NCBI RefSeq assembly: GCF_020745735.1
Contig: NC_083429.1
Coordinates: 55,843,877-55,907,876, forward strand
Length of the DNA: 64,000 nt
DNA from: Hemiscyllium ocellatum
Lineage: Eukaryota
Reading direction: 5' to 3'
The notes beneath the pieces were generated by a model. The model was not told where the DNA came from. It saw nothing but the letters and a program-made list of their open reading frames with translations, and did not search any database. Shown here in pieces: positions 1,118-55,734 of the stretch (the stretch's first letter is position 1; every line of letters begins with the position of its first letter). The translations under genes were made by a program, and so were the position numbers.

Positions 1118-1126
1118 AAAGGATAC
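1118..1126 (-). other. U12-type (minor spliceosome) 5' splice site
   Basis: The intron starts GTATCCTTT, the U12 donor consensus. Confidence 0.85.
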
Positions 1127-1372: not shown

Positions 1373-1450
1373 CTTCTCCCCGGCAGAGTGTCCAGGGATT
1401 TATCTGCATGGCTCGGGTGCAGAACAACAGCATCAAAGGGAATTTCACGT
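1373..1450 (-). CDS. HMBS: HMBS exon equivalent to human exon 8 (REIPFDAVVLHPSHADKSLDTLPGRS)
   Basis: 78 nt; RExPxDAVV motif; ttgcag acceptor and gtgagc donor. Confidence 0.96.
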
Positions 1451-1898: not shown

Positions 1899-1976
1899 TT
1901 GCAGATGGCTCCAATTGTAAACCCTGGAGGGAGTGTAGTTGGCAGATCTTTTAGAGAGTGAACTACCAGGTCAACT
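1899..1976 (-). CDS. HMBS: HMBS exon equivalent to human exon 7 ([26 protein letters not shown])
   Basis: 78 nt; catalytic HSLKD motif; gcag acceptor and gtgagt donor. Confidence 0.98.
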
Positions 1977-2141
1977 CTGCAAGACAGCAATTGCATGTGA
2001 AGTGCAGCAGTAAAACAGTTAAGACGACAGAACCAAAGGTAAAGTAATCAGGAACATCCTTCCTCCATTTACGAAGTCTAGTCCCGCCAGAATTTTATAG
2101 GTTTGAGAATCCTCCCTCATTCTTCTAACCTCCAGTGAGTA

Positions 2142-2465
2142 CAGGTACAGAACCCTTTATCTGAAATCCGTGAGCCAGCTGTTTTTCCGATTTTGGAATT
2201 TTTTTAGATTTCGGAATAAATGACATTTTCTCAGTGAAATAAAAAAACATATTACCCAACTGCACTCGCACTTGGGAGTAAGACACAATTTTCACCTGCC
2301 AGTGCTGAGCCACGCCGCCGTGTCACATCTCAGTAACGTGGTTCCACTGGGTGTGGAGTTGGGTCACGTGTTTGCCGCCAAAATGATGCTCCACACTCCA
2401 CAAAAACATTTCAGATTTCAGAACTTTTCGGATTTTGGAATTTCGGATAAAGGATTGTGTACCTG
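2142..2465. mobile_element. Tc1/mariner (Tigger/pogo-like) MITE
   Basis: Imperfect terminal inverted repeats CAGGTACAGAACCCTTTATCTGAAAT / ATTTCGGATAAAGGATTGTGTACCTG, flanked by TA on both sides. Confidence 0.8.
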
Positions 2466-2864
2466 TATATCCTAATCAATCCAGTTTCTCTTCATACATC
2501 AGAAATCAATCTGGCAAGCCTTTGCTGCATGCCCTCCAGAGTAACAACTTTTTAAAACTGGCTAAAGGAGTAAAAGTAAACTAGGAAATAGTTTGCGTCC
2601 TCTCGAGATTCGAGCACATAACTCAGGCTAGCATTTCAGTGCCGTTCCTAGGGCATGGATTATTTTTTAAAATAGTCAGATGTGGCACCCACTTTCAAAA
2701 GCAATAAAGGCAAGAACTCATTTGCCCTCTGGATGGGTGAAAATGGTGCCGTCGTACTATTTCAGAGAACAGCAACATCACCAAAATATATTACAATCAT
2801 TACCATGCAGTTTGTGGGATCTTGCTGTGTAAATTTGGTTGCTGCCTTTCTTACGTTACAATAA

Positions 2865-3066
2865 GAGTCGGTAAAGTATAGTGCTGGAAAAAGCAGATCA
2901 AGTCAGGCAGTATCTGAGGAGCTTGACCCTTCACCATTCCTGATGAAGAGCTTATGCCCAACACATCAACCTCTTGCTCCTCAGATGCTGCCTGACTTGA
3001 CGTGAGTTTTCCGGCACCAGACGTAATCGACACTGACTTCTCAAGTATGTGCAGTCCACACTATCT
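2865..3066. mobile_element. Palindromic PLE-derived short element (decayed hammerhead), inserted in an older SINE remnant
   Basis: Inverted arms around cctgatgaagagcttatgccc; TSD CTTACGTTA(C/T)AATAA at 2850-2864 and 3067-3081. Confidence 0.7.
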
Positions 3067-3472
3067 CTTACGTTATAATAATGATGGTATAGATAATGAA
3101 GTGCTTTGAAGTCCTTAGGGACTCAGGATGAGCTGAGATTGTTTTCCCTCTTACCCCGTATTAACACTGTGGAGACTCCCCAGGCCTGTCCAGCTGTCAG
3201 GCTATCTGTTTGAGGGGACAGCCAAGCCCTTACTCCACTATCTCATCCAAAGGCTGGCACCCGTGCCACTCTCCCTGCAGCATCAGTGTGTGCTCAAGTC
3301 TGTGGAATGGAACTCAATCTTGTGGCTGCCAGACAAGGGTGTTCCCCACGGTGAAGCAGCTGACAATCATATTAAATAACAGCCAAGAGGAAATATTTTA
3401 CAAAGCACGACTCCCAATATAAAATCAACAGCATTGTGAATGACAGATAGATAAACACCCAGGAATTCATAC

Positions 3473-3528
3473 TCATTTTTCTCCAATGCAGTTTCCAGCT
3501 CCTTTGTGAACAGGCTCTTCTCTCCAAT
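3473..3528 (-). CDS. HMBS: HMBS exon equivalent to human exon 6 (IGEKSLFTKELETALEKNE)
   Basis: 56 nt; GEKSLFTKELE motif; AG/GT boundaries. Confidence 0.97.
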
Positions 3529-3867
3529 CTAACAGAGAGAAATCAAAACCTGGGTTAATGATGTCAACCTGGTGCATGTATATCTCTCCCCTACTCCTGC
3601 TCCTCACTCACCTTATAGCAGTGATGTATGGACAGAGACCCACAACATACTGAAGAACCTAAAATAAGTCCACCTGACACTACGGAGAGTAGATGTGAAA
3701 TGGGGTGGACGGGAATCAGATTACCTTAAAACTGACACACATTTAGTTGTCTTTGTTATCTTTATGGAAATCAGCTAATTACAAAATATTTTAGTGTCTA
3801 CATTTGAAGTTACAAAATTGAAAAATGCTCCACTGAAAGCATAGTTTGTCAATAACAAACATTCTTA

Positions 3868-4412
3868 CACAAGGTACAGAACAGGGTTAGACACAGAGTA
3901 AAGCTCCTTCTCCTCTTTTAAACTAAAAAGAGAACTCTCTCCCCATTCCCCCCTTCAAGCAATCCCAGGACAGGTACAGCACAGGCTTTGAATCAAAGTC
4001 AAGCCTCCTCTACTCTTTTAAACTGGAAGTAAAACTTCCTTGACACTATTCCCAAACACACTCTAACCTTTTAAACTAAAAGTAAGCTCGAAGTAAAGTT
4101 CCCTGGACTCCGGCCCCATCAAACACTGCCAGGACAATAACAGCACTGGTTCAAACACAGAGTAAAACTCCCTCTGCTCTTAAACAGAAATAAACATCCC
4201 TCAAGAGTGCTGAAAGGAACCACCCCCAGGACAAGGACAGCATGGCATTCAATGCAGAGTAAAGCACCGTCTACTCTTCCAATCTTAAAGTAAAGCTGCC
4301 TTTACTCTTTTAAACAAAGTAAAGCTACCTCAACACTGTCCACATCTAACACTCCCAGGACAGGGTCAGCATAGAGTTAGGTACGGTGTAAGGCTTTCTC
4401 TACACTGCCCCA
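3868..4412 (+). repeat. Degenerate tandem array of a dispersed repeat (caggtacagcacagggttagatacagagtaaagctccctctacactgtccccatcaaacactccca-like)
   Basis: About 5 diverged units; related copies near 1730-1830 (+) and 54640-54810 (-). Confidence 0.7.
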
Positions 4413-4502
4413 TTTAAAGGGCTGAATTCAAGGATAATTGCATGACAGACACCATTTTACAGCAATTTACAAAATTGCATAATGAAAGAAAATAAGAGAT
4501 AC

Positions 4503-4552
4503 CTTTGAGAGCGCTGTATCCAAAATTTTGTCCCCAGTGGTTGTCATAGCAA
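4503..4552 (-). CDS. HMBS: HMBS exon equivalent to human exon 5 (IAMTTTGDKILDTALSK)
   Basis: 50 nt; TTGDKILD motif; AG/GT boundaries. Confidence 0.96.
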
Positions 4553-5309
4553 CTGCATTGATAAAAAAAAAGTATTATTCCAGGGTATTCAGCATCAGTT
4601 TAGGGAAAACACCAAGCTCACATCCATCTGACCTGGTGGGTGTAGCAATGCCATCTCCTGATTGCAGATCCCTCCCGAGCTGACGGACAGACCCTCTACC
4701 CAGCCTCTGTACCCTGGTTGGGTACACCCCCACTTCCCCCACCCTGGGTCATTATCCCTGCACAGCCCTGGGCGATTATGTCCCATCTCACCCCACCCAG
4801 TCAGCAGTACCACAACCACAATATGGGCCAATCCCTACCACCCGGACCCCGGTCAATCTCCCCGGCTCAGGCTGGACCCTGGTCAGCCTAACTTCAACAC
4901 AAGGTCAAAAATATCCATAGGCCAATTCCAGAAAAATTATAAAATTTCTCCAATTTGTGAGGCAAAGCAAGAACCCTCCAGACTGCCACCCACAGAGCAT
5001 CACAAAATGTATTAAACCAACCTCACCACCCATTCCTGCTCTCAGCTGTGAGGTCCAATTACCTCAATCAGACAGGTCACACACTCCTGTTTTATTTTTC
5101 TGTCCTGTAATAGCCCATTCATCAAACATTGACCCTGTAGCTTCTTAAAATTTGTAACACTTTCCTCTTTCAGCATCCCCTGGGTTTGCTATTCTGCAGC
5201 TTAATCAATCCAGTGCAAATTAGGTACACAGTCACCCAGGAACAGGCTCTTTAGTCCATGATACCATGCTGGCCATCGAACAAGTCAAATACTGCCTTCT
5301 CTGCACTTA

Positions 5310-5740
5310 AGAGTCATAGAGCTGTACGGCACGGGAACACACCCTTCGGTCCAGCTCGGCCATGCTGACCAGATATCCTAAACTAATCTAGTGCCATGTG
5401 CCAGCACTTGGCCCATATCCCTCTAAACCCTTCCTATTCGTATACCCATTCAGCTGCCTTTTAAATGCTGTAATTGTACCAGCCCCCACCACTTCCTCAC
5501 GCAGCTCATTCCATACACGCACCATCCTTTGAAAAAATTGTCCTTTAGGTGCCTTTTAAATCTTTCCCCTCTCACCCTAAACCTATGCCCTCTAGTTCTG
5601 GACTCCCCCACCCCAGGGAAAAGACCTTGTCTATTTACCCTCTCCATGCCCCTTAGATTTTATAAGCCACTATAAGGTCGCCCCTCAGCCTCCAACACTC
5701 CAGAGAAAACAGCCCCAGCCTATTCAGCCTCTCCCTTTAG
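5310..5740 (-). mobile_element. HER1/CR1 LINE 3' fragment
   Basis: RT C-terminal remnant (LFPGVGESRTRGHRF) plus the 3' tail. Confidence 0.9.
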
Positions 5741-6309
5741 CTTCTCTAATCTCAAATTTGTATGTTTAGTTTGAAAACTCTGGCCTGGGAAAGGGTCTCT
5801 CGTATATTCACCAGTGATGTCAGAGCTTAAGGGATTATCATATTAATCCATGTCAGATAAATTTGTTTTCTATTTTCTATAAATGGTAGTTCAGAGGTGA
5901 TCAGATTGAGGTGATTAAAATGATGAAAAGATTTGATAGGGTAAACAGGAAGAAACGCTTCCAACAATGGGATGTGCAGAACAAGAAGGGGACAACATTA
6001 AAATGAGAACTCAGCCTCCCAGGAGTAACATGAGCACATAGCAGAAATGAAAACCGCCCCCCCCCCCTCAAAGGTTATAGATTCGCAGATTCCATTGGAG
6101 CTTTTAAAGCTGGGACTGAGACTGATGCTGGACAAAAGCATCAATGAACAGATGGGGCACAGAGCAGTTTTGATGAGTGAAGGAACAGGCCTCTTTCTGC
6201 TGTTTTCAATACTATGTTTATGTTTTAGGGTCTAATTTATCCACTCACCAAAAAATGTCAATTTGATCCCTTCATCCTTTTTAAACTGTTGCTTTTATAG
6301 TATCTTAGG

Positions 6310-6588
6310 GAAGGCAGCAGCCGAGAGGTGTTATCACAAGACCCATTAATCCAGAGACCCTGCAACGTTCTGGTCTCCTGTGTTCAATCCCACAATAGCA
6401 AGTGATGGAATTTCAATTCCTGAAATCTGGAATTTGGAAAAACTGATTTGTCTTTAGGGAAGCAAACTGCATCCTGAGCCGTTCTGCCTCCGTGACTCCA
6501 GACCCACAGCTGGTTCTGCAAAGTCCTCTCGCCAGTTAGGGATGGGTAATAAATGCTGGTCTAGACAGTGATGTCCACAATCCATGAA
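6310..6588 (+). mobile_element. tRNA-headed SINE sharing both ends with the LINE at 32735-36850
   Basis: attaatccagagaccc head, ccagacccacagc body, agggatgggtaataaatgctgg tail. Confidence 0.65.
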
Positions 6589-6786
6589 GGGAGACAGTGA
6601 GGACTGCAGATGCTGGAGATCAGAGTCGGAGAGTGTGGTGCTGGAAAAGCACAGCCGATCAGGCAGCATCTGAGGAGCAGGAGAATTGATGTTTCAAGCA
6701 TTCCTGATGAAGAGCTTTTACTTGAAACGTTGACTCATCTGCTCCTTGGATGCTGCCTGACCAGCTGTGCTTTTCCAGCACCACGT
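6589..6786. mobile_element. Palindromic PLE-derived short element with hammerhead-like core
   Basis: gtggtgctggaaaagcacagc ... cctgatgaagagcttttacttgaaacgtt ... gctgtgcttttccagcaccac. Confidence 0.75.
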
Positions 6787-6912
6787 AATTCCTGAAAGGT
6801 ATGTATAGTCTTCCCTCATTCAGTCTGGGTTTCCAACCATAATTATCAACCCAACTATTGTATCCTCCATATCAGGATATTTTCCCTGATTCCCCAAGCA
6901 ACCAGTACTTAC

Positions 6913-6985
6913 TGATTTCAAGTTGCGTGTTTGGATAACATTGCTTCAGCATGTCTGTCACGAAGCCAGTCTGAGTCCGAGCAAG
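6913..6985 (-). CDS. HMBS: HMBS exon equivalent to human exon 4 (LARTQTGFVTDMLKQCYPNTQLEI)
   Basis: 73 nt, same size as the human exon; cccag acceptor and gtaagt donor. Confidence 0.95.
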
Positions 6986-7475
6986 CTGGGAAAAGCAAAA
7001 CCCAGATCAATCAGATTTCTCTCTCTCTCTCTCTCACACACACTCACACACCCACACACAGACACCCACAGACACACACCATCTGCCTGAGGTGAGAAAC
7101 CCAACAGGCACACCCATTTCTGCACATGGGGCAGTTTTTGCTCTGAGACAACAAAAACTGGCAACTTGAAAGCACCACCATTTTCTTGGGGAAGCAATGA
7201 CAGATTGTGGGTGTCAGGGACATCAACCTCCCGAGACTGAATGAACATAAGCTCCAAGCTAGACTTAAAAAGGAGCTGCATTTGCTGCTGCAAGGACCAT
7301 TGTCTAATTCAGAGTACCGTTAAACATAACGCTAGATTATACTCTTTTGCGTTGAGATTGAATAGGGGAAATATGAAGTAACATTTTCCAGTTTTTTTGG
7401 GGTATTATCAAAGGGACAAAAGCTGTAAATTAGGTGAAGCTGTCACCATGATGATGCTAAACTAAACCTGTTATA

Positions 7476-8965
7476 TAGTCAGAGATGTACAGCATGGAAA
7501 CAGACCCTTCAGTCCAACCCGTCCATGCCGACCAGATATCCCAACCCAATCTAGTCCCACCTGCCAGCACCCGGCCCATATCCCTCCAAACCCTTCCTAG
7601 TCATACACCCATCCACATGCCTTTTAAATGTTGCAATTGTACCAGCCTCCACCACTTCCTCTGGTAGCTCATTCCATACACGTACCACCACCCTCTGTGT
7701 GAAAACATTGCCCCTTAGGTCGCTTTTATATCTTTCCCCTCTCACCCTAAACCTATGCTCCCTAGCTTTGGACTCCCTCACCCCAGGGAAAAGACCTTAT
7801 TTACCCGACTTATCCTATCCGTGACCCTCATGATTTTATAATCCTTTGGAAGGTCACCCCTCAGCCTCTGACGCTCCAGGGAAAACAGCCCCAGCCTATT
7901 CAACCTCTCCCTATAGCTCAAATTCTCCAACCCTGGCAACATCCTTGTAAATCTTTTCTGAACCCTTTCACGTTTCACAACATCTTTCCGATAGGAAGGT
8001 GACCAGAATTGCACACTTTATTCCAAAAGTGGCCTAACCAATGTCCTGTACAGCCACAACATGGCCTCCCAACTCCTGTACTCAATACTTCGTTCAATAA
8101 AGGAAAGGATATCAAACGCCTTCTTCACTATCCTATCTTCTTGCAACTCCACTTTCAAGGAGCTATGAACCTGCACTCCAAGGTCTCTTTGTTCAGTAAC
8201 ACACCCTCGGGCCTTACCATTGAGTGTATAAGTCCTCCCCTGATTTGCCTTTCCAAAATGCAGCACTTCACATTTATCTAAATTAAACTCCATCTGCCAC
8301 TCCTCAGCCCAATGGCTCATCTGATTGAGATCCCATTGTAAACCAAAGTAACCTTCTTCGCTGTCCACTACACCTCCAATTTTGGTGTCATCGGCAAACT
8401 TACTAACTAGACCTCCTATGTTCACATCCAAATCATTTTACATAAATGACGAAAAGTAGTGGACCCAGCACCAATCCTTGGGGCACACCACTGGTCATAG
8501 GCCTCCAGTCTGAAAATCAACCCTCCACCACCCTCTGTCTTCTACCTTCAAGCCAGTTCTGTATCTAAATGGCTAGTTCTCCCTGGATTCCATGAGATCT
8601 AACCTTCCCATGAGGAACCTTGTCAAACACCTTACTGAAGTCCATATAGATCACGTCCACCACTCTGCTCTCATCGATCCTCTTTGTTACTTCTTCAAAA
8701 AATTAAATCAAGTTCATGAGACATGAATTCCCTTGCACAAAGCCATGTTGACCATCCTTAATCAGTTCCTGCCTTTCCAAATGTATGTAAATCCTGTCCC
8801 TCAGGATTCCCTCCAACAACTTGCCCACTTCTGATGTCAGGCTCACCGGTCTGTAGTTCCCTGGCTTTTCCCTACCGCCTTTCTTAAATAATGGAACCAC
8901 ATTAACCAACCTCCAGTCTTCTGGCACATAAAGTGCGACTATTGATGATACAAATATCTCAGCAA
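7476..8965 (-). mobile_element. HER1/CR1 LINE, 5'-truncated and degenerate RT
   Basis: ORF fragments with PGNYRPVSLTS, SKFADDTKIGG and RRLRGDL-like motifs; 3' tail at the low-coordinate end. Confidence 0.95.
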
Positions 8966-9287
8966 GTCTATGCATCCTGGGTGTTAATAACTAATGCTCA
9001 ATCCTGGGTAACTATTGTGATTACTGAGTTTAATATTTGCAGTGGTTTCCAGTACACGGTGATGAGCTGAGGGTGTTCTGTGAAACAGGAGTGGCAGTGA
9101 GAGATGGGGTGGCAGATCTCTGGCGCCAGGATACTCTGGGTCTACTCTGTGCCTCACACTGCAGCAGGAGTCTGATGTCAGATCAAGAAAAGTGAAACAG
9201 CTGTTATGCATGTGTAGAAATTCCTGCTGAAACTTCTAAAGTAGCATTTCAGGAGTCATTGATGGGAGAATTCCCAGAACAAAGACA

Positions 9288-9415
9288 CTTATCTGGATGG
9301 TCCACCTGCCCCACTCTGGGTTTTATCATGTTACACCCCCTCCCACAATTCTCACCACAGTGACTCAGCTACAAACTGACAGAGTTCTGCTGATCTGGAT
9401 AAGTGACAAGGATAA
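9288..9415. promoter_or_regulatory. Putative erythroid enhancer in an HMBS intron
   Basis: CAGGTG-N9-GATAAG on the minus strand (9308-9288), TTATCA 9323-9328, CACCC 9334-9338, TGACTCAGC 9361-9369 and GATAA at 9398 and 9411. Confidence 0.6.
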
Positions 9416-9679
9416 AGGAGTAACCCAGTACCCTCACACACACTGTCCCTGCTGATTCAAGTGTCAATCCACACATTTAAGCTATTGTGCTGCACATTGA
9501 AAATGTGAGCCCACAAAAACCTATTCAGTATTGAAATAAAACCTTAACCTTTGGGGGAAAAGCAAACCAAAGGAACTCTGAAAATGGTTTTTAACAAAGA
9601 AAACCTGCAGTGGATAAAATTCAGCATAGCTGATCTTCAACTGGCTGGAAAATTTTTCAGATACAAGTTTATAACTTAC

Positions 9680-9742
9680 CTGGCTCTTTCTTGTTCCAAC
9701 TCGGATGATTCTAGAAGAGTTCTCATTGTGAGCAGCAGAGTT
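9680..9742 (-). CDS. HMBS: HMBS exon equivalent to human exon 3 (NSAAHNENSSRIIRVGTRKSQ)
   Basis: Conserved IRVGTRKSQ motif, tcatctag acceptor and CAG|gtaagt donor; 63 nt. Confidence 0.93.
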
Positions 9743-46663: not shown

Positions 46664-47339
46664 GTAAGTGCATGTGCCTTCCACTTTATTCTGAATATTT
46701 CCCTCCTTAAAAGCTACTGATTTGTTTTGTTTTTCTCTCAGGAGTTTTGTTTACAGCCGCAACTTGTGGGTAAGGGCTTTTAAGGATTTAGGAATGAAGG
46801 ACTTCGATTTCACAAGCTACCATCAACGACAACCAACAGAGAGTTTCCTCTAGGCTATCTCCATCCAGCACTCCTGTGACCGGGTTTGATGCAGAGCAAA
46901 ACTGCCTCTACATTGTTGTTCAATTTAATCTGGTTCACCACCATCCTCAGAAGAACATACACCTCAGTTCCAATACACTTGCCCTGTACATTGGGAGAAA
47001 CAGCCATATCAGGAGGTTCTGTGTTTCACATCCAATGTAGTGCAGTGTTAATTGACATGAACACTTTCCATAGGCTTCTTAAAACCTGCAGACAAGAATC
47101 TTTATTGTATTGAGGCATTGCTTGGTGGTAGGGCTTAGTTTCTCTGTCATAGGATGGGGTGGCAACCACTTATAGTCCCCTTCTATGTGATTCTTCGATT
47201 TTATTTTCTCTAATTAAAGGAATTATTCAAAATTCCCAGGGGTAGGAACAAAGAGAGACCCAATGTAAAAGGCAAGTGTTCACCTACATGGTGACTGTCA
47301 GGTGTTGACCCATCAGTAATGGCTCTCTGTCTTGTGCAG

Positions 47340-47465
47340 GTGCTGGATGTGATCTTGTCAGAGCTGAGTGAACACGTGGATGAAGACCTGGCCGATCTCT
47401 TCCAGTACGAACAGCAAATGGAGGAGAGAAACTTAATCGCAGACAGTGGTTATCAGGGGGTCTGA
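47340..47465 (+). CDS. Uncharacterised gene, last coding exon (VLDVILSELSEHVDEDLADLFQYEQQMEERNLIADSGYQGV*)
   Basis: 126 nt to TGA; cttgtgcag acceptor; phase 0. Confidence 0.9.
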   Translation: MLDVILSELSEHVDEDLADLFQYEQQMEERNLIADSGYQGV

Positions 47466-49513
47466 GATCGAGGGGTGTCCGAGATGGGGTGGTGGTGTTA
47501 TTGGGGTGTCTGACACAAGGGCAGTAGTGTGTGGGTCTACAGTTTTAAATCATTATATTTTTGCAATTTATCTTTTGAACTTTATGTAAACAAGAAGTCT
47601 CACTTCGTAAACATTGATTTAACCCAAAAGTGGCTGTGATTTGATGTCAAACTAGTTAATTATGTAGATATATTTTATAGCTATGAATTTTTTTTAGCTT
47701 GTTTCTAATGATTTCAAACATAGCTGATATTTTAACTTGGTATTTTCCCCTCTGCCCCAATGTTTACATAAGAATTATTTTGGCATTGTTTAAACAGAGG
47801 AGTTGACCTAACTGTATTGATCCTATTACCCTTGTCCTGCATGCTGGAGAATAACTAGCCTTCCATGGTGTGGCCAGTGAACTAGAGTTTGACTTGATAA
47901 GCAGGGTACAGGTGGGAGACATTATCATGGATTGGTCAACAAACTGATACAGGTTTTGGTAAGTCTGCGAGAGATAACACTCCTGCTTTGATCAGATCTT
48001 CTGTTTCAAGAAACTCTTACGGACATCTTGAACTTGGACGAAGCCAGAAATTTGGCAAACGACTGCCGCAGCCGGATTGTAGGAGGGAAGTGTCTGCCCA
48101 GAGAATCCAGCCCCAAGAACTGTTCTGTGGGGACTTGGTCTAATCTTTTCCAAAAGTTGTTTTATTATTTTAGACACTTGACTTGGACAGACTAATTTAG
48201 GGTTCTTTTTACCATTTTGGATCATGTTTAGACTGGTTTGGGATTCACAGATTCCTACAGCGCCCTTCAACCCGTTAAGTCTGCAACAACATAATAACCA
48301 CTAAAAGTATGCTAATCCCTATTTCCTGCATGTGTTCCTTATCTTTGAATGTGATGATACTTGAAGTACTCATCTAATTTTTTTTAAAAAAGGTTGTAAG
48401 ATTTCCAGCCTCCACTCCCTCCCCAGGCAGTGCATTCCAGATTCCCACACCTACCGAGTGAAAATGGTTTCTTCTCAAATCCTCTCTCTATCTGTTACAC
48501 ATTACCCTAAAACTATGCCCTTTCATCTTGATGCCTCAACCCAGGGGAACAGCTGATGTCTCTTCAGTCTGTCCAAAACCCTCATAACATTATTTGAATC
48601 ATGTCCCCCCTCAGCCTTCTCTGCTCTAGAGAAAACAAACCAACCCTTTGTAGTCTCTCTTTGTAGTCTCAGTTTCTCCATCCCTGGCAACGTCCTGGTG
48701 AACCTCCTGTACGCCCCCCACCCCACCCCCACCAGTGCTAGCCTTCCTACATTGAGATTTAATGTTTGTGCTATGACAAAGTTGCATTTCTTACTTTCTA
48801 CAAGGTCTTCTGTTTCCTTTAAATTATCTTCCTTTTGTAATAATTTAGCATTTAACATTTCACTCTTGTTGTAACATTGTATCCAATAAAATGGTTGTAC
48901 TAACACGTTCCAGGGAATTGTCACTCATTCCTGTGACATCCTGAATAATGTTCTTAATCTGAGGGAGAATCTGCAGGGAATCTGTCCTCCCGGCTGTCTG
49001 TGGAATATTGGGCTGACACAGCCAGTTTGGATTGCTTTCTTACATCTGGCCTGTGGATATTGGTCAAAAGACGGTTTTTACCTTTTAGAATTAATAATGT
49101 TGCCTCCAGTGAAAAAACTGTTCGAATCCCCTTGAACTTTGAATTAAGCTCCTTCACTTTTGGTGTTTGGTGCACAAAATTGAGAAAGGTTTGGAAATGA
49201 TAAGAGCTCACTTGACCATTCAGACTTTAAACTGCATTTACTAGTTTACCTATTATCAGTCACATCTACAATGAAGGTAGCACACAGTTATCACTGGTAC
49301 GTCCAGTCCTTTGTTATCGTAGCTAAACTTTACAAAGAGAATTGGTAGCCTCAGAATAGAAGTAGCCAAAACGCTTCCTGAAATGGCTGATCTCCAACTT
49401 CAATGAAATGGTAGCTCACTTGGACCCCCACAATTCGAGGGAAATGTCAGAATTTTGTTTTCTTTGGCATCATACAATTACCACAAAGAATATAAATTAT
49501 GAAATCCAGTTTT

Positions 49514-49604
49514 TTATTGTTCACTTTGAAAGACATCAGAGATTTGTTGGCCAATGCTCGTTAAGATCTCGGGCACCTTTTGAAGGGCACTGGAAAAAAA
49601 GTCC
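49514..49604 (-). CDS. Apolipoprotein C-III/C-I-like gene, last coding exon (DFFSSALQKVPEILTSIGQQISDVFQSEQ*)
   Basis: Strong ctctctttttttag acceptor, phase 2, amphipathic helix, TAA stop. Confidence 0.85.
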
Positions 49605-49719
49605 CTAAAAAAAGAGAGAATAATTACTGCAACATCAGTGACAAAGTACAGAGGGTGCTTTACTCCATATCCCCAAAGCCTGTCCATCGTCTACAAGGCA
49701 CAAGTCAGGAGTCTGATGG

Positions 49720-50730
49720 AATAGAACATGGAACATTACAGTGCAGTTCATGCTCTTTGGCCCTTGATGTTGCACAAATCTGAAGCCAATCTACCTACAC
49801 TATTCCATTCTTGTTCATTTATCTATCCAACAACCATTTAAATGCCCTTAAAGTTGGCGAGACTACAACTGTTGCAAGCAGTGCCATGGCCCTACTACTC
49901 TGAGTAAGGAAACTACTGGCATCTGTGCTATATCTTTCACCCCTCAATTTAAAGCTATGTCCTCGTGCTCACCATCACCATCTGAGGAAAAAGGCTGTCA
50001 CTGTCCACCCACTCTAACCCTCTGATTATCTTATATGTCTCACTAAAATCACCTATCATCCTCCTCTCTAACAAAACAGCCTCAAATCCCTTAACCTTTC
50101 CTCGTAAGACCTTCCCTCCATACCAGGCAACAACCTAGTAAATCTCTGAACCCTTTCCAAAGCTTCCACACTCTCCTTATAATAGTGACCAGAACTGCAC
50201 GCAATCCTCCAAGTGCGGTTGCACCAGAGTTTTGTACAGCTGCAGCATAACCTCCTGACTCCAAAACTCAATCCCTCTACCAATAAAAGCTAACACACTA
50301 TATGCTTCATAACAACCCTATTAACCTGGGTGGCAACTTTCAGGGATCTATGTACATGGACACAGAGATTTCTCTGCTCATCTACAGTGCCAAGAATCTT
50401 ATCATTTGTGCAATACTCTGCACTCCTGTTACTCTTTCCAAAGTGAATCACCTCCTACTTTTCTCTATTTGTCACCTCAGCCCAGCTCTGCAGCTTATCT
50501 ACATCCCTCTGTAACCTACAACGTCCTTCGGCATATCCACCAACCTTCGTGTCGTCCGCAAATTTACTAACTCATCCTTCTATGTCCTCATTCAGGCCAT
50601 TATAAAAAATGACAAACAGCAGTGGCCCCTAAACGGATCCTTGTGGTACACCATTAGTAACTGAACTCCAGGATGAACATGTCCCATCAACGACCACCCG
50701 CTATCTTCTTTCAGCTAGCTAATTTCTGAT
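49720..50730 (-). mobile_element. CR1 LINE 3' portion in the last intron of the ApoC-like gene
   Basis: Degenerate RT remnants (ESVEALERVQRFTRLLPGMEGRSYEERL). Confidence 0.85.
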
Positions 50731-51499
50731 CCACTTGCCTGGATGGGTGCAGCTCCAACAACACACCTGAAGCTTGACACATCCGGGACAAAGCAGCTGT
50801 TTGATTGGCACCTCACCCACAAGCCTCCACTTCCTCCATCACCGATGCTCAATAGCAGCAGTGCGTATGATCTTCAAGATGCTCTGCAGGAATTCACTAA
50901 AGATCCTCAGACAGCACCTTCCAAACTCGCAGCCATTTCCATCGGGAAGGACAAGGACGGCAGGTACATGGAACACCACCACCTGCAAGTTCTCCTCCAA
51001 GGCACCATCCTGATTTGGAAATATATTGCCCGTTCCTTCAGTGTCACTGGGTCAGAATCCAGGAATTCCCTCCTTCAAGGACACTCTGGGTCAACCTGCA
51101 GCACATGGACTGCAGTGGGTCAAGAAGGCAGCCTCACCCCCACCTTCTCAACTGGCATGTAGAGGGATAATCAATGCTGGCTGCACGGCCATGCCCAGAT
51201 CCCATGAATTAATTTTTAAAAATCATATGTGCATACAAACTAATCTATGGAGGAGGCCATTCAGCCCCTCAGACCTGCTCCACCATTCAAGAAGATCAGA
51301 CTGATCAGATCAGTTCACATTCTATCCACTACCCAATAACCTTTCACTCTTTATGTATCAGGAATTTAACCACCTCAACCTTTAAATAAGTTAAAACTTC
51401 AATGTTTTCACTGCGCTTTGAAAAAGGGAGTTCCAAACAAAGACAACCCTCTGGTGAGAAAACAATTTTCCTGATCCTTCTCTTAAAAGGGTGACTGTT

Positions 51500-52127
51500 C
51501 AAAGTTTGTGAGAAGATTTGTAGCTCGGGTGCTCGTTGTTGTGGTTCTGTCCGCCGAACTGGAGCCAGACTGCTGCGACCACTAGGACTCATAACAGCAC
51601 ACAAACCAACAGCCACTCTCAGACAACAACTCACCAGGACAAAGGACCCGATACACAGCAGGAGCAAAACCAACATAGTGTACAAAATCCCATGCAAGGA
51701 CTGCACAAAACACTACATAGGACAAACAGGAAGACAGCTAACAACCTGCATCCATGAATACCAACGAGCCACGAAACGACACGACCAGCTATCCCTAGTA
51801 CCCATACACTCAGATGACAAACAACACAAATTCAATTGGGACAACACCACTATTATAGGGCAGGCCAAACAGAGAACAGCCAGGGAATTCCTAGAGGCAT
51901 GGCACTCATCCACAAATTCTATCAACAGACACATCGACCTAGACCCTATATACCACCCACTGCAGCGGACAGCAACTGACAACCGGAAGCGGCAGATTCA
52001 AACCAGTATAAATGCCGAAGGAAACATGACAGAAGCGCTTCACAGGAGGCTCCCAAGCACTGAGGATGTCACCTAGAAAGTAAACGTTTGCAACAAAAAC
52101 TCCCAGCTCGGCGAACAGAACCACAAC
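51500..52127 (+). mobile_element. Penelope-like element 3' fragment with a short inverted terminus
   Basis: GIY-YIG ORF 51678-52076; decayed hammerhead near 52056-52092; 12-bp TSD AGGGTGACTGTT at 51488-51499 and 52128-52139. Confidence 0.9.
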
Positions 52128-53928
52128 AGGGTGACTGTTTATTTTTAAACTGACTCAAGTTCTATATTCTCCCAAAAGATGAAACATTCTCTTCACATAC
52201 AGTCTGACGAGACCCCTCAGCATTGTACATGTTTAAATCAAGTTGCCTATTACTCTTCTAAATTCCAGTGTGTACAATCCAGCCTGCCCATCTGTCCTTG
52301 TTATCATTAGATAACAATGCCCACCCCCACCCCCACCTGCTCCCCACTCCCAACCCAGCCCCTTCCCCCCAACCCCCCACCCCATTCCAGGAAATAATCT
52401 CGTAAACCTTCCTTGAGCTGCCTCCAATCCACATCTATTTTACATTAGACAAGATGAGCAGTGCTGTGGACAGTGTTATAAATGTGGTCGCACCAGTGTC
52501 CTGGATAACTGAAGCAGTGCCTCCCAACTTGTGTATCCAATTTCACTCAGTAAAACATAACATTCAATTTGCTTTCCGCTTGCAATTCATGCAAGAGAGT
52601 TCGTCCTCTGAGCTCTGCAATCTCTCAGCATTTAAATAATTGGCTTTTGAAAAATTTTTCTTTCCAAAATGGACAATTTCACAATCTCTTTAAATCTGCA
52701 GCCACTTCTCTGACTTCACTGTCAGGTCATGGTTATTTCTGTTAGCACTCTCAGTTTGCTTTTTAATACTAAGTGCATTCAGATACAAATCCTTATTTTT
52801 GTCTTTTTATTATTTTTGTAGTCTTTAGCTTTACCTACTGAATCATTCTCAGATCTCTTGTTATCTCTGCCTGTCACAGTATACATATGATTTCCCATAT
52901 TAATACTTTGTTGTTTTTCCTCGCCTCTATTTGATTTACCACATCTTTCTAAATTAAATTCTTTAACTTATTATTTAATTTACAACTTTCTCAACTTGCT
53001 TATTTACATGTTTTGCTAGAACGCTGGCCCAAACGCATTTCAGATGTAGACCCAACTAATGGTGCAGCTCCCACTTTCCCCGGGAGTGATGCCAGTGCCC
53101 ATGAACTGGAAACCATTTCTACCACAACAATCTTGAACTACACATTCATTTCTTTAATCTTATTTCTCCTGTACCTATTTATACGTGGCTCAGGTAATGA
53201 TCCAGAAATAACTGCCTGTGAGCTTCTGCTTCCTAACTTGGTGCCTACTTTCTCTTCCTGACTCTGAAGTACCTCTTTCCTTGTATCTATGGCATTGATA
53301 GCTTCATAAATCACAACGACTGAATCCTTGCTGCTCTAATACTGGACTCTTGAGGTCCACACGCAGCATCAACATCCAACGCCAGAAGTCAATGCATTAA
53401 TAGGGGATCTCAAAGGAGCCTCAGAGCAGCTCTGTAATCGTGCAGCTTAGAGAGAACTTTGCTTTATTCTCCTTGACAACAGGTTTTGTCATGCACTGAG
53501 CAGATGTCATAATCCCTTGCACCAGACAAGAAATATAATTTTCTGGATTTCCCTCTTTGCTACAGAAAACAATGTCAATGTCCCTCAATATATTGTTCCC
53601 TATAACCACTGCTGTCCTCTTTGCTCTGCCCACTTCAGTAGCTACATTTATCACTTGCAATGGTCAACTAGCCCTGTGGTCATAACTGTCATCCTGACAA
53701 GCTGAAAGGATCTCAGACCTCTGGGGAGTTGCAAATACTGAGGCTCCTGCACTCTGCCATTTGGCTCCCCTCACCTGCCTCACTGATTACTGGGTCAGCA
53801 GGAACTGAGAAAAATGTATGAGTGTAGAATTTAAGCTTTCCATTCCCAACTGCCTCTGTAGGCTATTTTCACCCAATAATTACGAAAAGTAAACCGAGCT
53901 GAGTGAAGTCAATGTTGCGGCTGCTCAC

Positions 53929-54070
53929 TGGCTTTGTTGAACCACAGAAGACTCTCTGAAGCTGGTGAGCCATTCAGTTGCCTGATCTTTCATTCCCATT
54001 ACATAATCTTGTAGATTGCTGATGGGCTGGGCTGTAGGACTGGCTTGTTCCAATGGCAAAGCATCACAGG
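53929..54070 (-). CDS. Apolipoprotein C-III/C-I-like gene, middle exon (ACDALPLEQASPTAQPISNLQDYVMGMKDQATEWLTSFRESSVVQQSQ)
   Basis: 142 nt, ttattttccag acceptor and gtgagc donor, phase 1-2. Aligns without gaps to human APOC3 [29 protein letters not shown] (recalled sequence). Confidence 0.88.
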
Positions 54071-54891
54071 CTGGAAAATAAAGAGAGGAAAAGATTGGAA
54101 CAGATTGTTCGACAAAGGTTTGGGACAGAATATTTGGCAAAGGATTTCACAGCAAATAGAAGGATTAAAAAAACACAAGAATCTGGTTCTAATGTACTGG
54201 ATAATTTGTCTGAACTAATTATTTGTACAGAACCTGAAGGAAAACATTCAGGATTATCCAGCAAATGTTGACCAATTACAGAATCACATCTCAGATTGAA
54301 TACTGTTGTGGGTTTTGCAAGCGCAGACTGGCTGAGTATGGCTCATCCCCTGATTGGGAACAGGTTGTTTTCCCTTTACTTTGGTATTTCTTGTGATTTG
54401 TCCTGATGAGTACAAGGTTTGACAAAATGTGCTGTTTTTCAAAAATGACTCAACTTTAACCTAAGTCAGGAACCTCATTCAATTATTAATCATTGAAAAT
54501 GTCAGCCCGGGGTCATGTGTAGGTTTCTCCTTTGATGGTTTTTGGGGAACTAATTTCTGCGAGACCCTCAATCTATTGGATTGACCACCAGGGTTTATAA
54601 GAACCCAGGAAAGTTCAAAAGAAGGTCAATATAACATTAAATGTCCCTTGTGTAGGAGTGTTTGATCCGGACAGTATAGAGAGAGCTTTACTCAGTATCT
54701 AATCCCATGCTATCCCTGTCCAGGGGCCGTTTGATGGGGTCAGTGTTGAGGGATCTTTCATTTTAAAACAGTAGACCTTTACACTGTATCTAACCCAGTG
54801 CTGTCCCCACTATTGCTTGGAACAAAACAATCTCCCCAAGAAAAGAAACTGATTGATATTTACATTTAAATACAAAGTGTTGCTCACTTAC

Positions 54892-54949
54892 CAATTAGGA
54901 TTGCACCGAAGACGACTACAACAGACAACACGACCATTTGAATCTTCAT
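54892..54949 (-). CDS. Apolipoprotein C-III/C-I-like gene, signal-peptide exon (MKIQMVVLSVVVVFGAILI)
   Basis: AAA ATG; hydrophobic signal peptide; 58 nt ending in phase 1 at G|gtaagt, as in exchangeable apolipoprotein genes. Confidence 0.88.
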
Positions 54950-55734
54950 TTTGACTTGTCTTTTCTGTCTTTGCTGTCTTAAGTGAGAGGATTGATGATT
55001 GATAAAGAGGAATGGCATTATGTTACTGTGCAGTGCTCAGAATGCAAAGAATATGCTCAGAACATCTGAAACATATCAAAGATTATCTCCTGTTTTCTCC
55101 TAATCACCAGCACAAAGCAGCTTTCCCTCCAATTGTGCCTCACTCATGAATGCAGCTATCTCTGAAATGGGTAGCTCATTGTGTTGCTTCTAATCCCAAC
55201 ACTCTCGACCACAACATGATCTGTCTCTCCTCTTAACTCTCTCCCTTCACCACTTTGTCTCATCTGTCTCTTTATCCCATCTCTCATCCTCACCCCCTTA
55301 CTCTCCCCCCTCTCCCCTTCACTCTCTCTCACCTCTCCGTCTCCTCCTCATACCAAGCACTTGCTGACACTGGTGAGAAGCATAAAAAGTGGCAGCAGAG
55401 AGATGTCTCCCTGTAGTGACACAGGGTGAAGCCAGTACGAGTTGAGTGGGATTGAACACATTCCAGAAGAAAGCAGTGTGATGTTTGTAATGAAGGGGAA
55501 ATTGATTGGTTAAGTAATATTTCTCTTGTGTTTCCTAAAATAGGCCAATCAGTCAAGCGTGGAGCCAAAAGGTCAAACATTCAGTTTGGCCAACTTCAGT
55601 TGTAAGTGAATTAAACTGTTTGACACAGAATAATGTTATGTCTTCCAGTCAATGTTCCTTTTAGTGACATGGTACCACAGCATGGGACTCAATGGTATAA
55701 CAATTTCAGACTGAGATCACTCGAAACATGACCT

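What the first reader, a model, noticed from the sequence alone, without database searches (positions are those of the whole stretch)
49514..54949. Hidden 3-exon apolipoprotein C gene, a candidate cartilaginous-fish APOC3 with APOC1-like features
Seen: exons 54949-54892 (58 nt), 54070-53929 (142 nt) and 49604-49514 (91 nt) have strong splice sites and splice in frame. They give a 96-aa protein, MKIQMVVLSVVVVFGAILIACDALPLEQASPTAQPISNLQDYVMGMKDQATEWLTSFRESSVVQQSQDFFSSALQKVPEILTSIGQQISDVFQSEQ, with a signal peptide and amphipathic helices. Known: intron phases 1 then 2 are the layout of the small APOC genes. Against recalled human sequences, the 29 residues ending at the second intron match APOC3 ([29 protein letters not shown]) at about 10 positions without gaps. 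The last exon start DFFSSALQKVPEIL resembles APOC1 EWFSETFQKVKEKL. Human APOC3 and HMBS both map to 11q23.3, whereas APOC1 is on chromosome 19, and APOC3 is generally reported as missing from zebrafish. Inference: this is a likely unannotated shark APOC3 orthologue or ancestral-type ApoC, which would date this lipoprotein-lipase regulator to the jawed-vertebrate ancestor.
Basis: partly seen in the sequence, partly recalled or inferred. Interest (0 to 1): 0.88.

Follow-up and report, generated by a model that had tools for sequence, protein, structure and literature searches.

The report
Fast-evolving shark ApoC-type apolipoprotein gene
This shark DNA holds a real, apparently unannotated three-exon gene for a small secreted fat-transport (ApoC-type) protein that sharks and skates share, so this protein class predates bony vertebrates, but it cannot yet be called the true counterpart of human APOC3.

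Summary
Three minus-strand exons (54949-54892, 54070-53929, 49604-49514) have GT-AG borders and intron phases 1 and 2, and they give the stated 96-aa protein.

The gene is real. Heptranchias perlo has the same 58/142-nt exons and phases and the same tail-to-tail neighbour gene. Chiloscyllium punctatum has a partial model at 76% identity. Heterodontus francisci has a homologue that NCBI names "apolipoprotein C-III-like". Two skate homologues exist, one on a transcript-like contig.

The protein has a signal peptide followed by two amphipathic helices. It is about 8 kDa with pI about 4.

Apo-CIII is its only apolipoprotein Pfam hit (22.6 bits, below the 34.1 cut-off) and its nearest ESM cluster. 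However, human APOC1 scores higher than human APOC3, and the family consensus scores about equally against ApoC-I, ApoA-II and Apo-CIII. It is therefore an ApoC-I/C-III-type exchangeable apolipoprotein, and strict APOC3 orthology is unproven. HMBS linkage favours it, but no APOA-type gene lies in the window.

New here: exon 2 has diverged three times faster than its introns between two close sharks (p=5e-5, dN/dS about 1.4).

[quoted passage not shown] This is a new member of a known kind, of moderate interest.

The parts
54950..54991 (-). Conserved 5' untranslated stretch just upstream of the ATG. The transcription start, and any further upstream non-coding exon, are not defined.
   Evidence: blastn aligns window 54991-54886 to Heptranchias L003 14401-14508 at 72% identity. 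The four-way alignment with Chiloscyllium, Heptranchias and the skate transcript-like contig shows conservation up to about 42 nt before the ATG.
54892..54949 (-). Coding exon 1 (58 nt): the ATG and most of the signal peptide (residues 1-19 plus 1 nt). The following intron is phase 1.
   Evidence: The donor is G|gtaagt. Heptranchias has the same 58-nt exon. The exon is 97% identical to Chiloscyllium punctatum.
54071..54891 (-). Intron 1 (821 nt). It contains a roughly 100-nt element (54655-54758) that is tandemly repeated in Heptranchias intron 2.
   Evidence: Divergence from Chiloscyllium is 4.8%.
53929..54070 (-). Coding exon 2 (142 nt): the end of the signal peptide, a flexible N-terminus and the first amphipathic helix. 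This is the APOC3-like block. The following intron is phase 2.
   Evidence: On its own this exon hits Pfam Apo-CIII at E 0.0052. Heptranchias has the same 142-nt size. It is 13.4% diverged from Chiloscyllium against 4.5% in flanking non-coding DNA, Fisher p=5e-5.
49605..53928 (-). Intron 2 (4.3 kb), swollen by retroelement fragments.
   Evidence: ORFs at 50743-52076 resemble the repeat copies at 39.6-41.2 kb.
49514..49604 (-). Coding exon 3 (91 nt including the TAA stop at 49516-49514): the second amphipathic helix and the conserved C-terminal S-E-Q.
   Evidence: The Pfam Apo-CIII alignment runs through this exon to profile position 66 of 69. The window protein, Heterodontus P0002, skate P0004 and skate P0007 all end in SEQ.
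49513..49518 (-). AATAAA polyadenylation-type hexamer overlapping the stop codon (CAA TAA A).
   Evidence: Read directly. The same overlap occurs in the skate contig L002 at 340-345. A matching CAATAAAAGAACTGTGATTT block lies just past the stop in Heptranchias.
47325..47444 (+). Context: last coding exon of the neighbouring plus-strand gene (about 446 aa, unnamed). It lies tail to tail with the apolipoprotein gene, 2 kb away.
Evidence: tblastn gives 70% identity (E 5e-15) to the last exon of the 458-aa gene that lies tail to tail with the Heptranchias homologue.
1085..9742 (-). Context: HMBS (porphobilinogen deaminase) exons on the same strand as the apolipoprotein gene. HMBS runs off the left end of the window.
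   Evidence: Motif-bearing exons were found. Pfam PF01379 hits reach 41.7 and 27.1 bits, above its cut-off of 22.1.

Best explanation
Window 49514-54949 (minus strand) holds an intact gene for a small secreted exchangeable apolipoprotein of the ApoC-I/C-III type. The gene is apparently unannotated in this genome.

The 96-aa precursor has three parts:
- A signal peptide split by a phase-1 intron. I judge by eye that it is cleaved after ..ACDA.
- A short flexible acidic N-terminus.
- Two amphipathic helices (about residues 35-59 and 61-95), with a phase-2 intron falling just after their junction (codon 67).

The mature protein is about 8 kDa with pI about 4. It is expected to be made mainly in liver or intestine. 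By analogy with ApoC-III and ApoC-I, its hydrophobic helix faces should bind reversibly to the surface of plasma lipoproteins. There it would tune lipolysis and particle clearance, for example by restraining lipoprotein lipase. This function is inferred and was not shown here.

The gene is one member of a single, very fast-evolving gene shared by sharks and skates. It sits at a conserved locus, tail to tail with an unnamed gene of about 450 aa, and in this shark on the same strand as HMBS, roughly 40 kb upstream of the most 5' HMBS exon I identified.

Between two closely related sharks, the exon for the first helix has changed three times faster than the neighbouring introns while keeping its hydrophobic/polar pattern. 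This points to diversifying selection on a protein whose only hard constraint is amphipathicity.

Apo-CIII is the nearest known family. Whether the gene is the strict orthologue of tetrapod APOC3 (I estimate about 40%) or a co-orthologue or ancestral type of the APOC1/APOC3 group is unresolved.
For: Gene structure: the GT-AG borders, phases 1 and 2, and the exact 96-aa translation are confirmed.

Family:
- Pfam Apo-CIII hits at E 8.1e-5 and 22.6 bits. The alignment covers residues 37-94 against profile positions 9-66 of 69. No other apolipoprotein family hits.
- Exon 2 alone hits Apo-CIII.
- The nearest ESM-Atlas clusters are two APOC3 clusters (0.93 and 0.92), followed by C-II, C-I, A-II and C-IV. 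An APOC3 cluster is also nearest for the skate and Heptranchias homologues.
- A profile of the five cartilaginous-fish proteins hits only apolipoproteins at E below 0.1 in the PDB: APOC1 at 35.2 and 30.1 bits (a 38-residue APOC1 fragment also hits at 17.2 bits), APOC3 at 28.3, ApoA-IV at 21.3 and ApoA-I at 16.9.

Homologues:
- Chiloscyllium punctatum GCC39053.1: 76% identity, exons 1-2 joined at the same junction.
- Heterodontus francisci XP_067910277.1, named 'apolipoprotein C-III-like'.
- Heptranchias perlo XP_067826805.1.
- Leucoraja erinacea LOC129712369.
- An intron-free, transcript-like contig from SRR6291349.

Positional orthology: Heptranchias has exons of 58/142/85 nt with phases 1 and 2. 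It also has the same convergent neighbour gene, whose last exon is 70% identical.

Protein properties:
- AlphaFold predicts helices at 35-59 and 61-95.
- The hydrophobic moment peaks at 0.59, a value reached by 3 of 2000 shuffles. The mean of 0.349 is reached by 1 of 2000.
- pI is 4.05.

Selection:
- Exon 2 is 13.4% diverged from Chiloscyllium against 4.5% in 2284 flanking non-coding sites, Fisher p=5e-5.
- There are 17.5 non-synonymous against 3.5 synonymous changes, giving dN/dS of 1.4.
- All seven changes at hydrophobic positions are hydrophobic-to-hydrophobic swaps (alignment).

Linkage: HMBS lies on the same strand.

Heterodontus context: its homologue lies inside the span of an opposite-strand gene model that carries PF01442 (the ApoA/E family).
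Against: - Every Pfam apolipoprotein score is below its gathering cut-off.
- Human APOC1 beats human APOC3 in direct comparisons: 20.4 against 12.9 bits and 35.2 against 28.3 bits.
- The family consensus ranks ApoC-I, then ApoA-II, then Apo-CIII.
- There is no transcript evidence from this species. Neither the exact protein nor a close variant from this genome is in the protein collection, which includes Logan run assemblies.
- No APOA1/A4-type exon is visible in the window on either side, nor in the 14 kb upstream in Heptranchias.
- From recall, not checked here: HMBS lies about 2 Mb from APOC3 in human.
- dN/dS near or above 1 would also fit relaxed constraint, if the intact frames and the faster-than-intron rate are ignored.
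- Lipoprotein binding and lipase regulation are entirely inferred.
Confidence: 0.8

Rival explanations
1. Strict reading of the first reader: the gene is the one-to-one orthologue of tetrapod APOC3. On this reading APOC3 itself, and its role as a brake on lipoprotein lipase, dates to the jawed-vertebrate ancestor.
For: - Apo-CIII is the only apolipoprotein Pfam family hit by the window protein, and the alignment covers nearly the whole profile. It is also the best hit of Heterodontus P0002, at 26.6 bits.
- An APOC3 cluster is the nearest ESM cluster for three family members.
- The protein's length fits APOC3, since its C-terminal 15 residues align only to APOC3. Its acidic pI also fits APOC3 rather than the short, basic APOC1; the APOC1 and APOC3 charges are recalled, not checked here.
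- The phase-2 intron falls in the codon that aligns with human APOC3 Arg40. The human exon sizes are recalled, not checked here.
- HMBS linkage places the gene on the 11q23.3-type chromosome segment. In human, APOC3 is the only small apolipoprotein gene on that segment.
- The Heterodontus homologue is overlapped by an opposite-strand PF01442 gene model. This resembles APOC3 lying between APOA1 and APOA4.
Against: - The Pfam scores are sub-threshold.
- Human APOC1 scores above human APOC3.
- The family consensus and the skate member favour ApoC-I, and the Heptranchias member hits only ApoA-II.
- No APOA-type gene flanks the gene in the window or in Heptranchias.
- I could not build a phylogeny.
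Confidence: 0.4
2. The gene descends from the undivided ancestor of the small apolipoproteins, making it a co-orthologue of APOC1, APOC3 and perhaps APOA2. Alternatively it is an APOC1-type gene that has been moved. Either way it is an 'ancestral-type ApoC' and not APOC3.
For: - The family consensus scores almost equally against ApoC-I (23.3 bits), ApoA-II (21.5) and Apo-CIII (19.9).
- The family profile hits human APOC1 and APOC3 at similar scores, 30-35 against 28 bits.
- Exon 2 looks like APOC3 while the start of exon 3 looks like APOC1.
- Only one copy was found per genome where DNA could be read.
- Liu et al. 2019 also place ApoC-I closest to ApoC-III in their tree (PMC6854765).
Against: - If the two rounds of genome duplication preceded the split of cartilaginous and bony fishes, a gene on the HMBS-bearing segment should be the APOC3-side copy, not an undivided ancestor.
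- The pI and length differ from APOC1.
- No APOE/TOMM40-type neighbours are visible.
Confidence: 0.4
3. The protein is mainly a secreted host-defence or otherwise rapidly adapting amphipathic peptide. On this reading its likeness to apolipoproteins reflects shared ancestry, but its present role is not lipoprotein regulation.
For: - Exon 2 evolves three times faster than neutral flanks, and dN/dS is about 1.4. That pattern is typical of proteins in conflict with pathogens.
- Identity between shark orders is only about 30% even though the locus is conserved.
- The ESM neighbours include secreted helical antigens of parasites.
Against: - The mature protein is strongly acidic, with pI 4.05. Most membrane-active antimicrobial helices are cationic.
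- The nearest families by every method are plasma apolipoproteins.
- Only one pairwise comparison underlies the selection signal.
Confidence: 0.1
4. It is not a working gene but a chance open frame or a decaying pseudogene.
For: - There is no transcript from this species, and no protein record for it in the collection.
- dN/dS is not below 1.
- The Pfam scores are sub-threshold.
Against: - Intact frames of the same length, with identical exon sizes and phases, occur in sharks that diverged long ago.
- Intact homologues occur in four other species, one on a transcript-like contig.
- The 5' leader, the splice sites and the stop/AATAAA overlap are conserved.
- Exon 2 changes faster than neutral DNA, not at the neutral rate.
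- The amphipathic pattern is far beyond what shuffled sequence gives.
Confidence: 0.04

Closest known systems
Apolipoprotein C-III (Pfam PF05778; human APOC3, PDB 2JQ3)
   Same: - Both are small secreted proteins whose signal peptide is split by a phase-1 intron.
- Both have a second coding intron of phase 2, at the aligned position.
- The sequences align without gaps over 58 residues, to profile positions 9-66 of 69.
- Identity is 10 of 29 in the block before the intron.
- Both are acidic, about 8-9 kDa, and made of two amphipathic helices.
- APOC3 is the nearest ESM cluster.
- Both are linked to HMBS-type chromosome territory.
   Different: - The Pfam score of 22.6 bits is below the cut-off of 34.1.
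- Direct comparison with human APOC3 gives only 12.9 bits.
- Two of the three tryptophans in the lipid-binding C-terminal half of human APOC3 have no aromatic counterpart. W42 aligns with a phenylalanine, while W54 aligns with leucine and W65 with glutamine when the gapless alignment is extended by one residue (alignment).
- No APOA1/APOA4-type neighbour is in view.
- The function is untested.
Apolipoprotein C-I (Pfam PF04691; human APOC1, PDB 6DVU/1IOJ)
   Same: - It is the best direct match among solved human proteins: 20.4 bits at E 0.0046, and 35.2 bits with the family profile.
- DFFSSALQKVPEIL matches EWFSETFQKVKEKL at 7 of 14 positions.
- The skate member and the family consensus hit Pfam ApoC-I best.
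   Different: - The window protein itself gives no Pfam ApoC-I hit.
- It is 15 residues longer at the C-terminus.
- It is strongly acidic, whereas APOC1 is very basic (established knowledge).
- Human APOC1 lies in the APOE cluster on 19q13, not near HMBS.
'Apolipoprotein C-III-like' XP_067910277.1 of Heterodontus francisci, and unnamed models in Heptranchias perlo, Leucoraja erinacea and Chiloscyllium punctatum
   Same: - They belong to the same gene family: same length, MKIQ... signal peptide, (A/V)P(L/V)EE start of the mature part, and a Q-x-S motif at the exon 2/3 junction.
- The Heterodontus and skate proteins also share the SEQ end. The Heptranchias protein ends earlier, and the Chiloscyllium model lacks exon 3.
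- Heptranchias shares the exon sizes, the phases and the neighbour gene.
   Different: - Identity is only 29-31%, except with Chiloscyllium at 76%.
- This genome's copy is missing from the protein collection.
- The Heptranchias model carries a spurious 125-aa N-terminal extension, and the Chiloscyllium model lacks exon 3.
Apolipoprotein A-II (Pfam PF04711)
   Same: It is another small exchangeable apolipoprotein with the same gene layout. The Heptranchias and skate members and the family consensus give weak ApoA-II hits, 15-21 bits.
   Different: The window protein gives no hit. ESM similarity is lower, at 0.88. Human APOA2 is on 1q23.

Membership tests
Apolipoprotein C-III (PF05778 / APOC3 orthologue) | The sequence reaches the Pfam Apo-CIII gathering score of 34.1 bits. 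| tested here: not met
   The score is 22.6 bits at E 8.1e-5. The best family member, Heterodontus P0002, reaches 26.6 bits.
Apolipoprotein C-III (PF05778 / APOC3 orthologue) | Collinear, near full-length match to the Apo-CIII domain, and comparable size and charge of the mature protein. | tested here: met
   Residues 37-94 align to profile positions 9-66 of 69 as one ungapped stretch. The mature protein is about 72 aa, 8.05 kDa, pI 4.05. Human APOC3 is 79 aa (PDB 2JQ3 chain length).
Apolipoprotein C-III (PF05778 / APOC3 orthologue) | Intron in the signal peptide (phase 1) and intron in the mature region (phase 2) at the position homologous to human Arg40. | tested here: inconclusive
   Phases 1 and 2 are shown. 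The split codon 67 aligns with APOC3 residue 40. The human exon sizes are recalled, not checked here. The layout is also shared by the other small apolipoprotein genes, so it does not single out APOC3.
Apolipoprotein C-III (PF05778 / APOC3 orthologue) | Position in the APOA1/C3/A4/A5 cluster, on the strand opposite to the flanking APOA genes. | tested here: inconclusive
   No APOA-type exon was seen in window 1-49 kb or 55-64 kb, nor in the 14 kb upstream in Heptranchias. The Heterodontus homologue lies inside an opposite-strand PF01442 gene model, but its DNA could not be read. HMBS, which maps to human 11q23.3, lies on the same strand roughly 40 kb downstream, with a plus-strand gene in between.
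Apolipoprotein C-III (PF05778 / APOC3 orthologue) | Groups with APOC3 in a phylogeny of APOC1/C2/C3/C4/A2. | not testable with these tools
   No tool returned bony-vertebrate ApoC sequences as usable records.
Apolipoprotein C-III (PF05778 / APOC3 orthologue) | Binds triglyceride-rich lipoproteins and inhibits lipoprotein lipase and hepatic uptake. | not testable with these tools
   This needs plasma proteomics and enzyme assays.
Apolipoprotein C-I (PF04691) | The sequence reaches the Pfam ApoC-I gathering score of 28.3 bits. | tested here: not met
   The window protein gives no hit at E up to 10. The skate member reaches 20.4 bits and the family consensus 23.3 bits.
Apolipoprotein C-I (PF04691) | Short (57 aa), strongly basic mature protein encoded in the APOE/C1/C4/C2 cluster. 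| tested here: not met
   The mature protein is about 72 aa with pI 4.05, 3 Lys+Arg against 9 Asp+Glu. In this window HMBS lies on the same strand, and the nearest gene is an unnamed plus-strand gene, not an APOE-cluster gene. The APOC1 properties come from established knowledge.
Small exchangeable apolipoproteins (ApoA-II/C-I/C-II/C-III/C-IV group) | Signal peptide followed by amphipathic alpha-helices, with the shared intron layout and sequence likeness to the group. | tested here: met
   Predicted helices span 35-59 and 61-95. The hydrophobic moment is exceeded by at most 3 of 2000 shuffles. Intron phases are 1 and 2. Nine of the ten best named ESM hits are of this group. The PDB profile search returns only apolipoproteins below E 0.1.

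The most novel reading that the evidence does not exclude
Cartilaginous fishes keep a single small apolipoprotein gene at a fixed locus. This gene is the surviving pro-orthologue of the APOC1/APOC3 (and perhaps APOA2) lineage. It is under recurrent diversifying selection on its first lipid-binding helix. That would mean the ApoC class arose before the split of cartilaginous and bony vertebrates, and that in sharks it is engaged in an arms race (pathogen, parasite or lipid-ecology driven) instead of being a conserved housekeeping regulator.
Probability: 0.3. Interest if true: 0.6.

Novelty: new member of a known kind. Interest (0 to 1): 0.45.

Why it matters
The one published survey I found is Liu et al. 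2019 (BMC Evol Biol, PMC6854765). [quoted passage not shown]

This gene and its homologues in sharks of four orders and in skates show that an ApoC-type small exchangeable apolipoprotein was already present before cartilaginous and bony vertebrates diverged. Such proteins are simply missed by BLASTP-based surveys and by gene annotation because they are short and evolve fast.

The gene gives lipoprotein biologists a candidate regulator to test in animals whose buoyancy and energy storage depend on an enormous lipid-rich liver. It is also a natural example of how far an amphipathic-helix protein can drift while keeping its gene structure.

The faster-than-intron change in exon 2 is a separate lead that can be tested directly.

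Tried and rejected
- **Fold search.** The AlphaFold model had mean pLDDT 56 and pTM 0.24. That is too poor for a meaningful fold search, so none was run. Only the secondary structure was used.
- **Phylogeny with APOC1/C2/C3/C4/A2.** No tool supplied bony-vertebrate sequences as records. The full HMMER scan of 1.84 billion representatives found only cartilaginous-fish relatives plus two spurious repeat proteins, P0003 and P0006.
- **Second paralogue.** tblastn with all family members found only one copy in the window and one in the Heptranchias locus.
- **APOA-type neighbour.** Inspecting all stop-free stretches on the plus strand of 16.5-47.6 kb and 55-64 kb, and the ORFs of the Heptranchias locus, found none.
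- **Identity of the convergent neighbour gene.** Six exon pieces and the Heptranchias C-terminus gave no Pfam or PDB match. I considered ZPR1 (459 aa in human) but rejected it, because the C-terminus does not resemble the recalled human sequence and Pfam is silent.
- **Heterodontus locus.** I could therefore not verify that the PF01442 model there is an APOA gene fused with the neighbour gene.
- **Upstream non-coding exon.** The alignment of the skate contig's first 13 nt to window position about 55025-55036 is too short to interpret.
- **Literature.** Three searches for ApoC or APOC3 in sharks, chondrichthyans or elephant shark and one broader search found only Liu et al. 2019.

Full report
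**1. Observation**

- Exon 1 (54949-54892, 58 nt) begins with an ATG and ends at a consensus donor, TTG|gtaagt.
- Exon 2 (54070-53929, 142 nt) follows a strong pyrimidine tract and AG, and ends CCA|gtgagc.
- Exon 3 (49604-49514, 91 nt) follows ttctctctttttttag and ends in TAA.
- The CDS is 291 nt with intron phases 1 and 2, and the product is the stated 96-aa protein.
- The window contains no N.

The match is 10 of 29 with APOC3 before the second intron, and 7 of 14 with APOC1 at the start of exon 3.

**2. Is it a real gene?**

Four kinds of evidence say yes.

(a) *Relatives.* The word-index search found a partial Chiloscyllium punctatum model, GCC39053.1. It is 76% identical and joins exons 1 and 2 at the same junction. 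A full HMMER scan of 1.84 billion representatives with a two-sequence profile added three more:
- Heterodontus francisci XP_067910277.1, 98 aa, named 'apolipoprotein C-III-like' by NCBI.
- Heptranchias perlo XP_067826805.1, whose last 94 aa are the homologue.
- A 99-aa protein on a 1.5-kb contig of run SRR6291349.

A profile search then added Leucoraja erinacea LOC129712369. All share the MKIQ... signal peptide, the A-x-P-(L/V)-E-E start of the mature part and a Q-x-S motif at the exon 2/3 junction. Four of them also end in S-E-Q.

(b) *Structure.* In the Heptranchias locus the coding exons are 58, 142 and 85 nt with phases 1 and 2. The first two match the window to the nucleotide.

(c) *Position.* The Heptranchias gene is followed, tail to tail, by a 458-aa gene. 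The last exon of that gene is 70% identical (E 5e-15) to window 47325-47444 on the plus strand, which lies 2 kb from the 3' end of the window gene. So the window gene and the Heptranchias gene are positional orthologues although they are only 29% identical.

(d) *Untranslated parts.*
- The 42 nt before the ATG are conserved between shark orders.
- The stop codon overlaps an AATAAA hexamer (CAA TAA A, 49513-49518).
- The same overlap is present in the skate contig (L002 340-345).
- A matching CAATAAAAGAACTGTGATTT block follows the Heptranchias stop.
- The skate contig carries the whole frame without introns. The simplest reading is that it is a transcript, but the run type could not be checked.

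**3. What the protein is**

*Pfam.* Apo-CIII is the only apolipoprotein family hit. The score is E 8.1e-5 and 22.6 bits, with residues 37-94 on profile positions 9-66 of 69. Exon 2 alone already hits it at E 0.0052. The score is below the gathering cut-off of 34.1.

*ESM Atlas.* The two nearest clusters are APOC3 (0.93 and 0.92, with 196 and 186 shared features). C-II, C-I, A-II and C-IV follow. An APOC3 cluster is also nearest for the skate and Heptranchias proteins.

*Solved structures.*

| Query | APOC1 | APOC3 | ApoA-IV | ApoA-I |
|---|---|---|---|---|
| Window protein alone | 20.4 bits (E 0.0046) | 12.9 bits | – | – |
| Five-sequence family profile | 35.2 and 30.1 bits | 28.3 bits | 21.3 bits | 16.9 bits |

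No non-apolipoprotein hit falls below E 0.1 in the profile search.

*Other members and the consensus.* Member by member, Pfam gives Apo-CIII for Heterodontus (26.6 bits), ApoC-I for the skate (20.4 bits) and ApoA-II for Heptranchias (15.7 bits). The family consensus scores ApoC-I 23.3, ApoA-II 21.5 and Apo-CIII 19.9 bits.

*Structure and physical properties.*
- AlphaFold gives a low-confidence model (pLDDT 56), as expected for a lipid-free exchangeable apolipoprotein. It has helices at 2-23 (signal), 35-59 and 61-95.
- The 18-residue hydrophobic moment peaks at 0.59, reached by 3 of 2000 shuffles. Its mean of 0.349 is reached by 1 of 2000.
- The mature protein is about 8 kDa and acidic (pI 4.05; 3 K+R against 9 D+E).

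*Reading.* This is a small exchangeable apolipoprotein of the ApoC-I/C-III type. In length, charge and C-terminal extent it fits APOC3 better than APOC1. In local motifs it is a mosaic of both.

**4. Orthology**

*Sequence* cannot decide between APOC3 and its relatives. The intron layout is shared by the whole apolipoprotein family (Liu et al. 2019, PMC6854765).

*Synteny* gives partial support for APOC3.
- HMBS exons lie on the same strand at 9742-1085. They were confirmed by Pfam PF01379 at 41.7 and 27.1 bits.
- In human, HMBS and the APOA1/C3/A4/A5 cluster both lie in 11q23.3 (established knowledge), though about 2 Mb apart.
- In Heterodontus the homologue lies wholly inside the span of an opposite-strand 699-aa gene model that carries PF01442, the ApoA/E family. 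I read this as a possible fusion of the neighbour gene of about 450 aa with an APOA-type gene on the far side. That would mimic APOC3 between APOA1 and APOA4.

*Against APOC3:* no APOA-type exon is visible in the window (49 kb downstream, 9 kb upstream) or in the 14 kb upstream in Heptranchias.

I put strict APOC3 orthology at about 40%. A co-orthologue or ancestral-type ApoC is about equally likely.

**5. Unexpected: rate of change**

The window is very close to Chiloscyllium punctatum. Substitutions in 2284 aligned upstream and intron sites come to 4.5%. Exon 1 shows 3.4%. Exon 2 shows 13.4% (19 of 142), Fisher one-sided p=5e-5.

Over exons 1-2 there are 17.5 non-synonymous and 3.5 synonymous differences. 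This gives dN 0.122, dS 0.087 and dN/dS 1.4.

All 16 replacements keep the class of the residue at hydrophobic positions: V/I, I/V, V/L, M/I, W/L, F/I, V/M.

A neutral pseudogene would change at the intron rate, not three times faster. With the frames, the splice sites and the amphipathic pattern all kept, the best reading is diversifying selection on the first helix. The evidence is one species pair and one exon, so it needs codon models on more species.

The same fast turnover explains why orthologues in other shark orders are only about 30% identical, and why surveys have missed the gene.

**6. Annotation status and novelty**

The exact 96-aa sequence is not among about 15 billion public proteins. 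Searches that would have found a near-identical variant from this genome returned none. Within the limits of that collection, the gene is therefore unannotated here.

The family itself is not unknown to databases.
- One member is auto-named 'apolipoprotein C-III-like'.
- Two are 'uncharacterized'.
- One is 'hypothetical, partial'.

[quoted passage not shown] The present evidence contradicts the first statement and makes the second doubtful.

I class the gene as a new member of a known kind.

**7. Mechanism**

*Shown:* a signal peptide, two amphipathic helices, an acidic charge, a conserved gene structure and locus, and the nearest families.

*Inferred, by analogy with ApoC-III and ApoC-I:*
- Secretion from liver or intestine.
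- Reversible binding to lipoprotein surfaces through the hydrophobic helix faces.
- Modulation of lipoprotein lipase and of particle uptake.

No expression or biochemical data could be obtained here.

**8. Species**

Non-coding identity of about 95% to Chiloscyllium punctatum places the window in a close relative. Another note of this scan calls the genome epaulette shark. I did not check this.

Noticed in passing
window 53929-54070 (exon 2) against L001 1554-1695: Between this shark and Chiloscyllium punctatum, exon 2 of the apolipoprotein gene has 13.4% substitutions against 4.5% in 2284 flanking non-coding sites (p=5e-5). Nearly all the exon changes alter the amino acid.
   Followed up: partly
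window 16924-47465 (+), last exon 47325-47444: An unnamed multi-exon gene of about 446 aa lies between HMBS and the apolipoprotein gene. It is rich in acidic helical LLEE-type stretches. Its last exon is 70% identical to the end of a 458-aa Heptranchias perlo gene in the same convergent position. Six exon pieces gave no Pfam or PDB match.
   Followed up: partly
window 49513-49518; L002 340-345; L003 16993-17012: The stop codon of the apolipoprotein gene overlaps an AATAAA hexamer (CAA TAA A) in the shark and in the skate contig. The block is kept just past the earlier stop in Heptranchias. This may explain why the protein so often ends in S-E-Q.
   Followed up: partly
window 39616-41194 and 51344-52076: There are two copies, in opposite orientation, of a repeat. 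Its ORF has a GIY-YIG-like motif (YKIPCKDCTKHYIGQT..RQL), as in Penelope-like retroelements. One copy sits in intron 2 of the apolipoprotein gene.
   Followed up: no
window 58400-60330 and 13600-14720: These are long tandem arrays open in several frames (proline-rich or glycine-rich translations). They would generate spurious long ORFs in gene prediction.
   Followed up: no
window 54655-54758 against L003 15415-16882: An element of about 100 nt, single-copy in intron 1 of the window gene, is expanded into a tandem array of about 1.4 kb in intron 2 of the Heptranchias orthologue.
   Followed up: no
L003 10001-14444 (Heptranchias perlo XP_067826805.1): The RefSeq model of the Heptranchias homologue carries a 125-aa N-terminal extension from upstream exons. 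The extension has no counterpart in the other species and looks like a prediction artefact. It hides the signal peptide and probably explains the 'uncharacterized' label.
   Followed up: partly
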